Source: Saccostrea cucullata (Eukaryota). From it: a DNA stretch of 64,000 nt. The position numbers were made by a program, and so were the translations under genes. Within the stretch, counting starts at the first letter, position 1, and every line of letters starts with the position of its first letter. Positions 24,616 to 56,492 of this stretch are shown here, one piece after another. A model generated the notes under the pieces. It searched no databases. It worked only from the letters and a program-made list of their open reading frames with translations, and was not told the origin of the DNA. The stretch lies in contig NW_026918862.1 of NCBI RefSeq assembly GCF_032062105.1, positions 62,001-126,000 of the forward strand, given 5' to 3'.

Positions 24616-24657
24616 AACTAGAGCAAAGCTCGTTGCAAAGCAACGAGTGGGTCTTCC
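24616..24657 (-). mobile_element. Helentron 3' terminus (subTIR + hairpin + CTAG-TT)
   Basis: Minus strand reads GGAAGACCC-A-CTCGTTGC-ttt-GCAACGAG-CTTTGCTCTAG-TTT; perfect 8-bp stem at 24629-24647; same architecture as 19808-19849. Confidence 0.8.
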
Positions 24658-25689
24658 TTCTTAGCAATAAGTAGAAAGTGAAATGTTCAAATGTTAACTT
24701 TGAGACCATTCTTTATTTCTTTGACTCAAACAGCAAAAACCTTTTCATAAAGTGGAGTGATCATAAGGATAAATAATCTCTCCAACACCAGAAACTGACC
24801 TACAAAATTTATACAACCTCATTTTTTGACTTGTGAAGTCATTGTTGAAAAGAAATATTTTTTTCGATTGTATCTGATAATGAAGATAATTCAAAACCGA
24901 GTATTTTTTCATTAGTAGTGGTGTAAATCATAAAATATGCTGGGGTTTGTTCTACGCGAAATTTTATGTAAGCGATAAATGTTATTTTTGAAGGTGATTT
25001 CCACCAGATGTCAACAAAGGATTATTATTTGTGTGACCTAACAATAGTTATTTTTTTTTACTTTTTAATTTTGATATCTTTGTAAAAAAAAAAAAAGAAA
25101 CCGGGAATATAATTTGCCAAAAATTGTAGCTATTTAAAGCCATATATGGCATAACTGATCCAAAAATATATTTTTGAAAAATACAAAATTAAGTAAAGAA
25201 ATATAGTTAATACATCTAAATTAAAGCTTTTCATACAATTCTGAACATGGAGAACACCTCCATTCACCTAATAATACAAATATATCTCTATTATGTGTAA
25301 TTTAAATCTTTTGTATTTTTTTCTTCCGAGCCGGAGAAAATTCCGAGAATCCAAATTAAATTGTGATATCTTTATAACGCAACTGACTTAGATTTTGTAA
25401 TATACGGAAAAGTTATATCTTTATATAAAGTAATGATACAAATAATAAGTTCTTATAATTTTAGTCTAATAATTTTCATTGTACATACGCCATATATGGC
25501 TTTATTATGGATAATTATTTTTTCATGAACAGAATGGAAAATAGTTTTAGCGATGGGAATCGGACCAAGTGGCTTTAAAATATATGGCTCAAAGATTTAT
25601 AAGGGAAAGAGACATTCCATTTTTTGTGAATGATAATACGTTTTCGTTGAGATTTAATCTTTGGTGATATTCTGTTTTTTATGCATGAA

Positions 25690-54600: not shown

Positions 54601-56492
54601 TTTCTCTTTGACAAAGATTGGTGTGTATTTGCAGCTGAATATTTCACCCAACGATTATCACTGTAAGTGTAAATGTCCAATTCTAAAAGATGTGAAACGG
54701 CTACAATTTCTATTTCTGTTGCCCATGTGCCTTCTCTTATCATCTGAGTTGAAGACAAATGAGACTTTACAGAGCTATCACCTTGCCTGAGATAAGACTG
54801 AAAGAGATGTTGATTCTGAAGCATATGTTCGCATATCATTTGTCGAATCTGCATGTGAAAGTCTTCAGAATGGGTGACACAATATGACACAGCTCTGAAA
54901 AAGCAATTCCCATCAGCGTCAATTTCTTTGACTTTTGACGGAGCTTTCAATTCTTGGTCATAGTTAGATTCAAGATCATTATCAGTTTTTTGATCAGGTA
55001 ATTCTAACTGGTTACAAATTTCTTTTGTCTCTTGAATTGTGAGTGGATGGAATCTCAGTTTCTGATATTCAGATGTAACATACAGTACACTGTCATCAGT
55101 ATTTTGAGCATGTGTTCCTTTATTTCCAGACAAAGTATCATTCTGCCTCTCAGAAATACTTGTTACATTTCCCATCAAAGTTTCACTGAGACCAATAAAA
55201 TCAACTTCAGTCATGTTTGATCTTGCAGTGCAAATCACCCCTGTTATTTCACAATCAACAATTCTAGAGAATCCTAAAGATACAGCTAGAGACTCTAAGT
55301 GGAAATATATTTGCTTGATACTGTTATACAGTACTCTTGTGCTTTTACCATCAACACTAAGCAAACCTTTCTGACATCTGGAATGAGAATCGAACAAGAA
55401 ATACCCCTCATCTGTTTTGCCAACCAATAATGAGTTTCCCCCGAAGCATATAAAACAACCATCTGTGTCATTTAATGCCATTTTTAGAGCATCTGTGAGT
55501 GGATAGGCGGCAAAATCATGGTAATTTGGTTCATCCCCTGACAAGTAAATGATACTAGGAATTGGTTCTTTTCTATGAAATTCATAACTTTCATTGAAAC
55601 ACTCAAACAAATGAGGTAATTCATCAACTAACAGAAACCTATTATTGACTGTAGAGCTACATTGTAAAAACATATACAACTCATTACCAGTCTGCAGAAT
55701 TTTGTCCATGTCTTCTTTTTTCCAGCATTTAGAGCTCTTGATTTTATGATATGCCATACCTGATAAGCAATTAGCTACACATTGACTACCAGCTGTGTCT
55801 CCAAACAAAGGATCTCCTTGATGATATGAACCTTGAACAGAAATTGGACAGATACATTTGTTTTCTTGATTACAACTTGGGCATCCATCTAAAGAAATCA
55901 ATCTTTGCACTGTACAACTCTCAGCATTTATAGCAGAGTTAACATTATTAACATCCTTTCTATCATTGTAATAACTGTCTGTTTTTCCACTTGTAACAAT
56001 CTTTATATCATTCTTTGAACTGTCCATAAAACATTCATCATTTGAATTCCTGCTGAATTTGTCACCCAACAAATTCAGCTGCGCCTGACCTGCTGAGCTA
56101 GGCTTAAAGCCATCATCATGCTCAGGTACTCTCGCTGGAGTACAAACCCACGCTGGGGAGTCAGGGGACAGTGCCTTGTCAGCGTTATCGACAAACAGAC
56201 GACTTCCCTGAGGAGATGATTGCCTCAGGGCCTTTGAGTCCATTTTCTCATAAAGAGAGGCCTGGACTCTGGCCAGTTTTCTTTCTTCTTGTGTGTCTAA
56301 ATGCTTGTAGACATGCCTATCAGTGCTGCTGGATAAAAATTCTGTATCCTTCAGATCTGGTTTAGTGGAGTCTTTCTGCGTTTCATTTACAGTGGACTTT
56401 GAAGTGATTTTGCATTCTTCACTTTTCTTCCTCTTTCTTAACCTGTCTCTCTCTCTTTTTGTTCTGCCTGTCAAACTGTTACGCTTTGCCAT
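48624..56492 (-). CDS. Helentron/Helitron2 RepHel transposase, 2622 aa: herpes-tegument-like USP + OTU + Zn finger + HUH Rep + Pif1 helicase + AP-type endonuclease
   Basis: QGSYHQGD...AGSQC238 and FD368SH370 (Peptidase C76-like); DGNC530FFRA..WATEIE..H643Y (OTU); YICCCC..WICYTC; VEFQQRGSPHMH and YIVSYISK (Rep motifs 2/3); GGAGTGKS, IDEVSMV, GDFFQLPPV, CTAHKVQG, QAYVALSR (Pif1); HNIQSL, LTETW, IYRP, GDFN, LDLVY, SYH (EEP endonuclease). Uninterrupted frame. Confidence 0.96.
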   Translation of the reverse strand: MAKRNSLTGRTKRERDRLRKRKKSEECKITSKSTVNETQKDSTKPDLKDTEFLSSSTDRHVYKHLDTQEERKLARVQASLYEKMDSKALRQSSPQGSRLFVDNADKALSPDSPAWVCTPARVPEHDDGFKPSSAGQAQLNLLGDKFSRNSNDECFMDSSKNDIKIVTSGKTDSYYNDRKDVNNVNSAINAESCTVQRLISLDGCPSCNQENKCICPISVQGSYHQGDPLFGDTAGSQCVANCLSGMAYHKIKSSKCWKKEDMDKILQTGNELYMFLQCSSTVNNRFLLVDELPHLFECFNESYEFHRKEPIPSIIYLSGDEPNYHDFAAYPLTDALKMALNDTDGCFICFGGNSLLVGKTDEGYFLFDSHSRCQKGLLSVDGKSTRVLYNSIKQIYFHLESLAVSLGFSRIVDCEITGVICTARSNMTEVDFIGLSETLMGNVTSISERQNDTLSGNKGTHAQNTDDSVLYVTSEYQKLRFHPLTIQETKEICNQLELPDQKTDNDLESNYDQELKAPSKVKEIDADGNCFFRAVSYCVTHSEDFHMQIRQMICEHMLQNQHLFQSYLRQGDSSVKSHLSSTQMIREGTWATEIEIVAVSHLLELDIYTYSDNRWVKYSAANTHQSLSKRKGSIYLEHKHGNHYNVVLATSNSASQRKEGVVTKVGQYNSEGNHRIHKQQHNLNHRMDHMFHIESRRRNDRKRYRENYARRNKKLNDASIRYQKDKAYREKCKIASKKRYVNNISYKEKTIARSKIMHKKRATNDELRKRASQSVVKKYRSDRTYRNKLKQRSLEKYRTNVHHRERMKTRSIVKYKNNEVFKNKLKEQSIKKYRTNESFRNIVKSTGKKNYHTKAEVKDAKKENVQKQRIKAKSDLPNEDKIEMLFKQNSSKGIDYICCCCSRLLFENQVQRCEHQMYEKSSIAASIAHDCIQEKYLHACSESCQRNCTKSSLWICYTCHRKILSGKMPAEAAANDMFLEDIPEELSHLNSLEQHLVALHIPFMKVMALPQGGQKNVHGPVVCVPSDMKKTTSLPITVDDNALLRVKLKRKLNYKGYFEYQFVKPKHIKEAIMFLKENNQWYKDIVFDSQWEESSKDLLQSDDIEGKCEEDSKNPDEDVETPMIAMDTCLQPVDIRQDVLDHYFDDIYNIAPGEGKNPIRMLQEEGNEAKTFPCLFPSGKFAWDESRKVKISLSRYFNNRLMNEDNRFAKDTNYIFFSQYMSELNQVIEKTQISMRKSFSKFKCGKQITSDMLGDPSVLSQLLRSDEALRFMQPIRGTPAYWSVAQKDLFAMLRQLGIPTWFCSFSAAEFRWNDTINTILTQQNDNRDPKQLDWSEKCEILRSNPVTVARMFEHRFHVFQRDVILSPSQPIGKVVDFFHRVEFQQRGSPHMHCLYWVENAPKFGENDEESICNFVDQYVSCAVPSINQPDLRKIVLDVQQHSKTHSKSCRKKGTECRFNFPRPPSQRTFINKPADEDNDQNCSSENSGPKISKTQAKEILLRVWNHLLDEANANKSASDIFNDLELTQDLYELAHNKVTAKTAMVLKRNPHEVWTNQYNPCLLKCWDANMDIQYVLDPFSCIVYIVSYISKAEREMGMLLKQTKIEAEEGNLNARDTMKKIGSAYLHHREVSAQEAVYRVCNLKMKECSRKIVFIPVGDNPTRLSKPLSQMKRKKYEGNAQKCDDDDDDDDEESIWMTNIIERYENRPDSDKFQGMCLAQFCSEFRVLSKSQVPKGPNESVYELQNGKGFIQQRTRTNPAVIRYPRFSSEKSSEKYYQSLLQLYLPHRKEEQLKPKGFDLYMSFYEKGHIRMSKKRKLQSVKSIVDANRACFAKNEDVVNSAQEVFDMVGEPEDAWAQLCPETEVSRKECMSTRKRPDLQENDHNDVLPDIDNVFPTENLSYVVQQSNSTKQEILPVLQSLNETQKKIFYHVRDWCLKRVAGEEIDPLHIFVTGGAGTGKSHLIKAVHFEAERLFSKNLPSPDCVSVVLTAFTGTAAFNIGGNTIHKVFALTKFLPLPYEPQNEQSLSTLRVKLESLQILVIDEVSMVYKRLLYYVHERLVQIKKCKKPFGGVTVLAVGDFFQLPPVKQSKNERLYKENGSYPDDHWLELFKLVELNEVMRQREDVPFAMFLNTLRIRTKEENLSEETKHMLKNCIRDGPEDALHVYSTNDEVNNFNLSMLKKTSEELVEIDALDYQKDKTTGKLSLRESPLSSTKLDGLSASILLSVNARVMLIRNINVDDGLVNGVMGNISHFLTEHKNGKSSIKAIGVQFDNKNVGKKTGKSAANGHIVLIERIEEEVKVNKSKSVVRHQFPLKLSWACTAHKVQGMTADQIVVNLDKSFSPGQAYVALSRVTSLRGLFIETADEALLEKKIHADADVKSSIEKMPLLFPVQNEGSSLLSCTKIILHNIQSLAGNFENLKHDCRFWNADILCLTETWLTQGQDTANFQIEDYNFCHISRAESYNSENCKTDRLRTSNGGGVAVYSRKSSNAVIIPICGKNIECIALKLIQEQVILVNIYRPSVLPAKDFLIALENVMKSVLLPNYRGIILGDFNENAKIGGPVQKFMFEKGFTQVVSFPTTEQQTVLDLVYTTCPLELETFKVPTYYSYHEAVLVNLKK

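What the first reader, a model, noticed from the sequence alone, without database searches (positions are those of the whole stretch)
24616..56492. Candidate giant (>32 kb) two-gene Helentron: RepHel plus its own convergent SSB/RPA-like gene
Seen: an intact minus-strand RepHel, a convergently transcribed intact spliced OB-fold gene 5.3 kb from its stop, and a perfect minus-strand Helentron 3' end at 24618-24657 beyond the OB promoter, correctly oriented to close the element. No 5' end was found in the window. Established: plant Helitrons and a few animal ones carry RPA70-like genes. Inference: initiator/helicase, SSB with acidic tail, endonuclease and two deubiquitinases form a near self-contained, virus-like rolling-circle replication module. 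The 24618 end could instead belong to an independent short HINE.
Basis: partly seen in the sequence, partly recalled or inferred. Interest (0 to 1): 0.85.

Follow-up and report, generated by a model that had tools for sequence, protein, structure and literature searches.

The report
Giant oyster Helentron carrying DNA-binding gene
This is a real 43.8-kb rolling-circle transposon in an oyster genome, longer than the longest one in Repbase, that carries besides its transposase a spliced, expressed gene for a probable single-stranded-DNA-binding protein also found beside such transposons in another oyster and a scallop; the parts are of known kinds, but the size and this gene family seem undescribed.

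Summary
Confirmed and extended. RepHel (48624-56492, minus, 2622 aa) is intact. The OB gene is spliced as modelled (five joins in RNA-like contigs) and probably starts at an extra exon at 28560-28634. The missing 5' end lies 4.4 kb beyond the window. Four other copies of the host repeat join both flanks directly, so 43,784 bp (about 12 kb of it nested repeats) form one insertion. The termini are those of an abundant non-autonomous family (median 7 kb; 241-323 ends). This is the only one of 38 paired copies longer than 18.4 kb, so it is either their master or a composite made by end bypass; unresolved. The OB family is multicopy, under purifying selection and tied to Helentrons in Saccostrea echinata and Pecten. 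Tail-to-tail order is not conserved, and most RepHels have no detectable OB gene nearby, so it is an accessory. RPA, Ssb-like and HIN domains, OTU, herpes-type protease and endonuclease are already described in Helentrons; there is no polymerase or capsid, so 'virus-like, self-contained' is not supported. The scan noted an RPA-like gene with another RepHel in this genome (s1-728162). New variant of a known kind.

The parts
24618..24660 (-). Helentron 3' end: subTIR 24649-24657, hairpin 24629-24647, CTAG 24618-24621, then host T-run
   Evidence: 323 genomic copies with at most 1 mismatch
24710..24832 (.). Subterminal segment repeated at 70% identity at 60453-60583; the pair flanks the 35.7-kb RepHel-OB core
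28372..28634 (+). Probable OB-gene promoter (TATA 28372-28379), non-coding exon ending 28443 and first coding exon 28560-28634 (12 codons from ATG 28599, basic NLS-like)
   Evidence: sequence; homolog P0007 has a matching N-terminal peptide; RNA-like contig has 74 unplaced nt upstream of 40171; the join itself was not observed
32916..34282 (-). Nested Tc1/mariner element (41-bp perfect TIRs, 301-aa DDE_3 ORF) in the long OB intron
40171..43304 (+). OB-fold gene, six downstream coding exons (about 304 aa with the first exon, 288 aa from ATG 40183): two OB folds, a small third beta domain, acidic tail
48624..56492 (-). RepHel 2622 aa: herpes tegument-type protease 222-295, OTU 526-635, DUF6570, HUH Rep (H1390/H1392, Y1584/Y1588), PIF1 helicase, AP endonuclease; ATG directly after a splice acceptor
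59677..60000 (-). Candidate RepHel promoter and non-coding first exon (CpG-rich, donor near 59676); inference from sequence only
   Evidence: single-copy in the genome
60453..64000 (-). Body of an abundant non-autonomous family (median 7 kb), lacking its own last 90 or so bases. It runs past the window end to window-equivalent 68401, where the Helentron 5' end lies (L061:4369-4401: 12-bp hairpin containing the subTIR complementary to 24649-24657). Holds a 31-bp tandem array and a nested 1.05-kb repeat
   Evidence: 5' end: (z -7.3), 241 genomic copies, empty sites

Best explanation
A 43.8-kb Helentron (HLE2, subgroup b type) that moved as one unit. Shown: both termini, precise insertion without duplication next to a T-run, intact RepHel, spliced transcribed OB gene inside the ends, recurrence of the OB family beside Helentron genes or ends in other bivalves. 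From established Helitron biology: RepHel nicks at the 5' end, its helicase displaces one strand while host polymerase copies, the 3' hairpin ends displacement, and the strand is inserted directly or via a circle. Inferred: the OB protein is an accessory, separately promoted ssDNA-binding factor that coats the displaced strand, which would matter most for very long elements; it is optional and can sit in either orientation, usually in the part of the element nearer the CTAG end. Inferred: this RepHel, or a kin with the same ends, mobilises the 250-320 short copies that share its termini. About 12 kb of the length is later nested repeats; about 32 kb is native.
For: Empty sites in four host-repeat paralogs; one 5' and one 3' end only, none inside; motifs intact; splicing; dN/dS 0.09-0.33 against paralogs, dS saturated against S. 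echinata with dN 0.37; OB exon 3 on 43 contigs, 5 others within 30 kb of a Rep motif against at most 0.8 expected, P about 0.001; Pecten OB gene tail-to-tail with a RepHel 8.4 kb away; S. echinata OB genes 2.5 and 4.7 kb inside Helentron 3' ends, one in three copies 99.9% identical over at least 26 kb that stop at the end, with a RepHel and no end between them; fold matches to tandem-OB nucleic-acid binders and profile hit to Sulfolobus SSB, E 2e-6.
Against: No second full copy: RepHel DNA has no paralog above 72% and the core is single-copy. The 130-bp direct repeat and the near-complete HINE body at the 5' side suggest a composite origin. 36 of 43 OB contigs show no exact Rep motif (many are short; 12 motif sites were not listed); three other RepHel loci have no OB within 10 kb. 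ssDNA binding is inferred from fold; the top structural match, HIN-200, binds dsDNA too. The 5' flank is A, not T.
Confidence: 0.75

Rival explanations
1. Same unit, but a one-off composite: a short HINE lost its 3' terminator, read through into a neighbouring RepHel-OB Helentron with a homologous 3' end, and the fusion jumped once. The RepHel would then not be the native master of these termini. This concerns origin only and is compatible with most of the best explanation.
For: 60453-68401 is almost a whole HINE (sizes) ending just where its terminus should be; 70% direct repeat; identity to the family falls from 99% at the 5' end to 77-84% near 60453; 37 other paired copies are 4.9-18.4 kb; terminator bypass to a downstream Helitron is the standard capture model (PMC6431247).
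Against: No second 5' end inside; the terminal 43 bp match the family exactly; HINEs are usually deletion derivatives of their masters (PMC4067079); a C. virginica RepHel is likewise enclosed by the ends of a short HINE family.
Confidence: 0.45
2. The OB gene is a host gene family (for example an invertebrate HIN-like DNA sensor or repair factor) that Helentrons repeatedly capture and that does nothing for transposition.
For: Introns, polyA expression, purifying selection, many copies without a nearby RepHel, free orientation; best fold match is HIN-200; OB-linked RepHels are scattered over the tree.
Against: Identical OB copies at dispersed loci; three 99.9% copies ending at a Helentron end; linkage in both oysters and scallop with RepHels only 28% alike in the helicase; the N-terminus has a basic NLS-like peptide, no PYD or CARD-sized domain.
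Confidence: 0.15
3. The core was inserted later into a resident HINE, or the contig is misassembled, so 43.8 kb never moved together.
For: Single copy; fragmented assembly; no long read checked.
Against: The core has no ends of its own; the 70% repeat is too diverged for a target duplication; flanks rejoin the host repeat exactly; no N gap inside the element; a comparable element of at least 46 kb exists in S. echinata.
Confidence: 0.1

Closest known systems
Helentrons / HLE2 subgroup b (Thomas et al. 2014, PMC4067079; HELIANO, PMC11417382)
   Same: subTIRs, palindromic 5' end, 3' hairpin, T-rich target without duplication, RepHel with AP endonuclease, OTU, Herpes_teg_N and DUF6570, abundant HINE partners
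   Different: 43.8 kb against a Repbase maximum of 39,893 nt and a mean of 9.7 kb; a separate seven-exon OB gene 5 kb or more from RepHel, beyond the 4-kb filter of the HELIANO domain survey
RPA70-like genes of plant Helitrons and mite Helentron-Mo; Ssb-like_OB and HIN domains in HLE2
   Same: An extra OB-fold gene carried by a rolling-circle element, proposed to bind ssDNA
   Different: The mite gene is intronless and clearly RPA1 DBD-A/B; HELIANO found RPA only in subgroup a and upstream. This family stays below Pfam cut-offs for RPA, is spliced, about 280-300 aa, lies downstream here and varies in orientation
HIN-200 domain of mammalian PYHIN proteins
   Same: Tandem OB pair; best structural match (Z 15.3 over 185 residues; Foldseek E 3e-13)
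   Different: 13% identity, rmsd about 6 A, only 1-2 Z units above Teb1 and RPA; no profile hit to HIN structures; extra third domain; no pyrin domain
Polintons/Mavericks, Teratorn
   Same: Large multi-gene DNA transposons
   Different: No polymerase, integrase, packaging ATPase or capsid gene was found here

Membership tests
Helentron (HLE2) | HUH Rep plus PIF1 helicase in one ORF | tested here: met
Helentron (HLE2) | C-terminal AP endonuclease; DUF6570 marker | tested here: met
Helentron (HLE2) | Diagnostic F/Y-x-R before motif 2 and S in G-S-P-H-x-H | tested here: met
   criteria from PMC4067079
Helentron (HLE2) | subTIRs, 5' palindrome, 3' stem-loop | tested here: met
Helentron (HLE2) | No target-site duplication | tested here: met
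   four paralogous empty sites
Helentron (HLE2) | Insertion between T and T | tested here: inconclusive
   3' side abuts a T-run with about 4 extra T; 5' side follows A
Helentron (HLE2) | Current transposition, circular intermediates | not testable with these tools
   single full copy; short copies 95-99% alike at the 5' part
RPA70-like | RPA1 DBD-A/B profile match above cut-off | tested here: not met
   REPA_OB_2 best E 8e-7 in homologs, 20.9 bits for P0002 against a cut-off of 27
RPA70-like | RPA70 N-terminal OB-F and zinc-binding DBD-C | tested here: not met
   279-aa model has two OB folds and a 65-aa beta domain; no Rep_fac-A_C hit
OB-fold SSB (works like) | OB fold | tested here: met
   homolog model pLDDT 88; RPA70 OB rmsd 1.8 A over 96 residues
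OB-fold SSB (works like) | ssDNA binding | not testable with these tools
   inferred from fold and context
HIN-200 / PYHIN | Tandem OB pair with HIN geometry | tested here: inconclusive
   top match but rmsd 5.9 A and small margin
HIN-200 / PYHIN | Pfam HIN match and pyrin domain | tested here: not met
   HIN E 0.054 at best in 2 of 11 exons; none for full-length members
Self-synthesising or virus-like element | Polymerase, capsid, packaging ATPase | tested here: not met
   only RepHel, OB and a nested Tc1 ORF found

The most novel reading that the evidence does not exclude
Bivalves host an old lineage of 40-50 kb Helentrons, missed by annotation tools because of size and introns, that keep their own spliced tandem-OB ssDNA-binding gene in order to move very long strands; this OB family is the transposon stock from which HIN-200-like domains derive, which would link rolling-circle transposons to mammalian DNA sensors.
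Probability: 0.12. Interest if true: 0.85.

Novelty: new variant of a known kind. Interest (0 to 1): 0.52.

Why it matters
It gives a Helentron with both ends and empty sites that is longer than the Repbase record, an intact candidate master for a few hundred recent HINEs in a genome type where autonomous partners are rarely defined, and an unannotated, expressed OB family. The old proposal that Helitron-borne RPA-like genes assist rolling-circle transposition has, to my knowledge, not been tested; a naturally optional gene beside an intact RepHel, with matching short and long donors, makes that test easy to set up. It also shows that 10-kb search windows and 4-kb domain filters under-call bivalve Helentron size and gene content.

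Tried and rejected
Conserved tail-to-tail layout: rejected (five other own-genome loci: two same-strand downstream, two divergent, one same-strand upstream; S. echinata divergent; Pecten convergent). A third gene at window-equivalent 65.7-67.4 kb: no Pfam hit; it is part of the HINE body. Hidden internal ends or a circle-junction remnant between the two stops: none. Near-identical second copy: none. Monophyly of OB-linked RepHels: four span 95 of 117 tips, midpoint-rooted FastTree, no formal test. OB genes within 10 kb of three other full RepHels: none. 3' end after the C11442 OB gene: not found in 9 kb. PDB profile search found no HIN chain. Literature searches found no paper on HIN-200 and Helitrons or on giant mollusc Helentrons; HELIANO supplements were not held. 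Most OB and HINE loci are therefore known by coordinates only; I did not fetch own-genome DNA by another route. The N gap at 5020-5188 lies outside the element and was left alone. No complex prediction was run.
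Full report
Setting. The window is G000:C999:62001-126000 of a 1.17-Gb, 23,869-contig assembly. Homologs annotated as Saccostrea cucullata lie on contigs of the same lengths as G000 contigs (P0006, 61,024 = C16488; P0180, 281,379 = C8833), so the host is very probably that oyster (inference). Positions above 64000 are window-equivalent, read from L061.

Observation. RepHel is one 2622-aa ORF at 48624-56492 (-) with Herpes_teg_N, OTU, DUF6570, Helitron_like_N, PIF1 and AP endonuclease. 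HUH histidines, both tyrosines, Walker A and B, the expected cysteine and histidine of both protease domains and the endonuclease motifs are present (residue roles from my own knowledge). The OB gene has six GT-AG exons from 40171 to 43304 in compatible phases. All five joins occur in contigs of run X1, which is RNA only by guess, and three in polyA reads of X13 at low depth. A further exon at 28560-28634 behind a TATA box would add 12 basic residues in phase; a homolog begins with a matching peptide (P0007) and the X1 contig has 74 unplaced bases upstream of 40171. That join is inferred. The gene then starts 3.7 kb inside the 3' end, with an 11.5-kb intron holding a Tc1 and other repeats.

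Ends. The 3' end at 24618-24660 is as described. A 5' end with a 12-bp hairpin containing the complementary subTIR ends at 68401. The left flank is a dispersed repeat that stops at 24613. In four other copies of that repeat the sequence runs straight on into what follows 68399, with no duplication. The insertion is 43,784 bp. No other end of this type lies inside. Nested repeats sum to about 11.8 kb by a rough tally, leaving about 32 kb. Repbase elements reach 39,893 nt (PMC11417382).

Relation to HINEs. The terminal motifs occur 323 (3') and 241 (5') times with at most one mismatch. Of 38 copies I could pair, 37 are 4.9-18.4 kb, median 7.1 kb; this one is the outlier. The stretch 60453-68401 is the body of that family, 96-99% identical at the 5' end and 77-84% near 60453. 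A 130-bp direct repeat at 70% identity (24710-24832, 60453-60583) brackets the 35.7-kb core, whose unique parts are single-copy. So either the HINEs derive from this kind of element by internal deletion, the usual case, or a HINE that lost its terminator read through into a RepHel-OB element. I rate these about equal. Either way the unit moved whole; later insertion of the core is unlikely because it has no ends and the repeat is too diverged for a target duplication.

The OB family. Exon 3 has 50 matches on 43 contigs, with conserved splice positions and identical copies at dispersed loci. dN/dS is 0.09-0.33 against close paralogs. Five other contigs have a Rep motif within 30 kb, against at most 0.8 expected (P about 0.001; clustering of repeats is not controlled): C11442 and C3266 same strand with OB downstream, C17587 and C23161 divergent, C14153 same strand with OB upstream. 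Named homologs are uncharacterised oyster and scallop proteins. In Pecten maximus an OB gene faces a distant RepHel tail-to-tail at 8.4 kb. In S. echinata the closest homolog lies 2.5 kb inside a 3' end nearly identical to ours, and another member sits in three copies 99.9% identical over at least 26 kb whose identity stops at a Helentron 3' end. One of these has a divergent RepHel with no end in between, so that element is probably at least 46 kb, with RepHel antisense to the ends, an orientation reported once in Drosophila. Against an obligatory role: most OB contigs show no Rep motif, most Rep sites have no OB hit nearby, three full RepHels have none within 10 kb, and OB-linked RepHels are not a clade. 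Short contigs and a single-exon query make these counts lower bounds.

What the protein is. The joined model was not searched or folded, by instruction. The S. echinata homolog P0002 (52-62% identical in exons 1-3) folds at pLDDT 88 into two OB folds and a small beta domain. The family profile hits Sulfolobus SSB at E 2e-6 and RPA70 weakly (organism of those entries from my own knowledge); Pfam RPA scores stay under cut-off. Structure searches rank HIN-200 first (Z 15.3, 185 residues, rmsd 5.9), then Teb1 and RPA (Z 14-14.5); baculovirus LEF-3 fills most of the top viral rows. Atlas neighbours are mollusc, chordate and cnidarian hypothetical proteins and archaeal RPA. It is a tandem-OB nucleic-acid binder, most likely for ssDNA (about 60%), not a member of RPA70 proper. 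The acidic tail is limited to some members.

Mechanism. Established for Helitrons: nicking at the 5' end, strand displacement, termination at the 3' hairpin, host polymerase, circular intermediates. Inferred here: the OB protein, expressed from its own promoter, protects the displaced strand, useful for 40-kb substrates and dispensable otherwise; the endonuclease and proteases have the unproven helper roles proposed earlier; this RepHel could mobilise the short copies in trans.

Comparison and verdict. RPA in Helentrons (PMC4067079) and RPA, Ssb-like_OB, HIN, OTU, Herpes_teg_N and endonuclease in HLE2 (PMC11417382) are published, so the parts list is not new and the element is not virus-like. 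I found no report of this spliced family or of Helentrons this long in molluscs (open-access library only); HELIANO ignored domains more than 4 kb from RepHel and used 10-kb end windows. An earlier unchecked note in this genome (s1-728162) describes a RepHel inside intron 1 of an RPA70-like gene; that could be what the same-strand loci here are, untested. New variant of a known kind; interest 0.52. The HIN link is a lead only.

Noticed in passing
window 32916-34282: Tc1/mariner with perfect 41-bp TIRs and a 301-aa DDE_3 ORF nested in the OB intron; looks young.
   Followed up: partly
L061:1700-3420 (window-equivalent 65.7-67.4 kb) and window 61580-61732: The HINE body contains GC-richer, exon-like pieces with splice signals on the minus strand and no Pfam match; present in at least 40 copies at 91-97%. 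Possibly a captured or non-coding spliced gene spread by the HINE.
   Followed up: partly
L086:23259-23390; G000 C1031, C4641, C9207: Helentron 5' hairpin ends occur as tandem stacks 53-56 bp apart, suggesting repeated use or re-insertion at the 5' end.
   Followed up: no
L086, L087, L084: Three oyster RepHels of this subfamily appear antisense to the nearest end polarity; L087 (C. virginica) has a 20.7-kb RepHel block enclosed by the ends of a 1.15-kb HINE family, paralleling this locus.
   Followed up: partly
L079:24640-24715: A minimal HINE of about 75 bp in C. angulata: 5' hairpin fused directly to the 3' hairpin and CTAG.
   Followed up: no
G000 C134:5363-5544 and C10245:7288-7469: Two 3' ends of the same family placed as an inverted pair about 140 bp apart, at two loci.
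   Followed up: no
G000 C10771, C23161, C12484: OB genes duplicated in tandem 4-5 kb apart with identical exons.
   Followed up: no
window 43657-44976 and 45717-46218: 361-bp and 41-bp tandem repeats between the OB and RepHel stops; 31-bp array at 63638-65530.
   Followed up: no
window 60151-60234: 36-bp-arm hairpin just inside the core-HINE junction, with a few copies elsewhere; small MITE or remnant end.
   Followed up: partly
window 7174-8078 and 18688-20080: Broken LINE reverse-transcriptase fragment and short HINE copies left of the element; old inverted repeat pair at 1.7-5.7 kb and 9.6-15.4 kb.
   Followed up: no
P0006 (C16488): An annotation fuses an OB exon to a HECT-like sequence; probably a gene-model artefact.
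   Followed up: no
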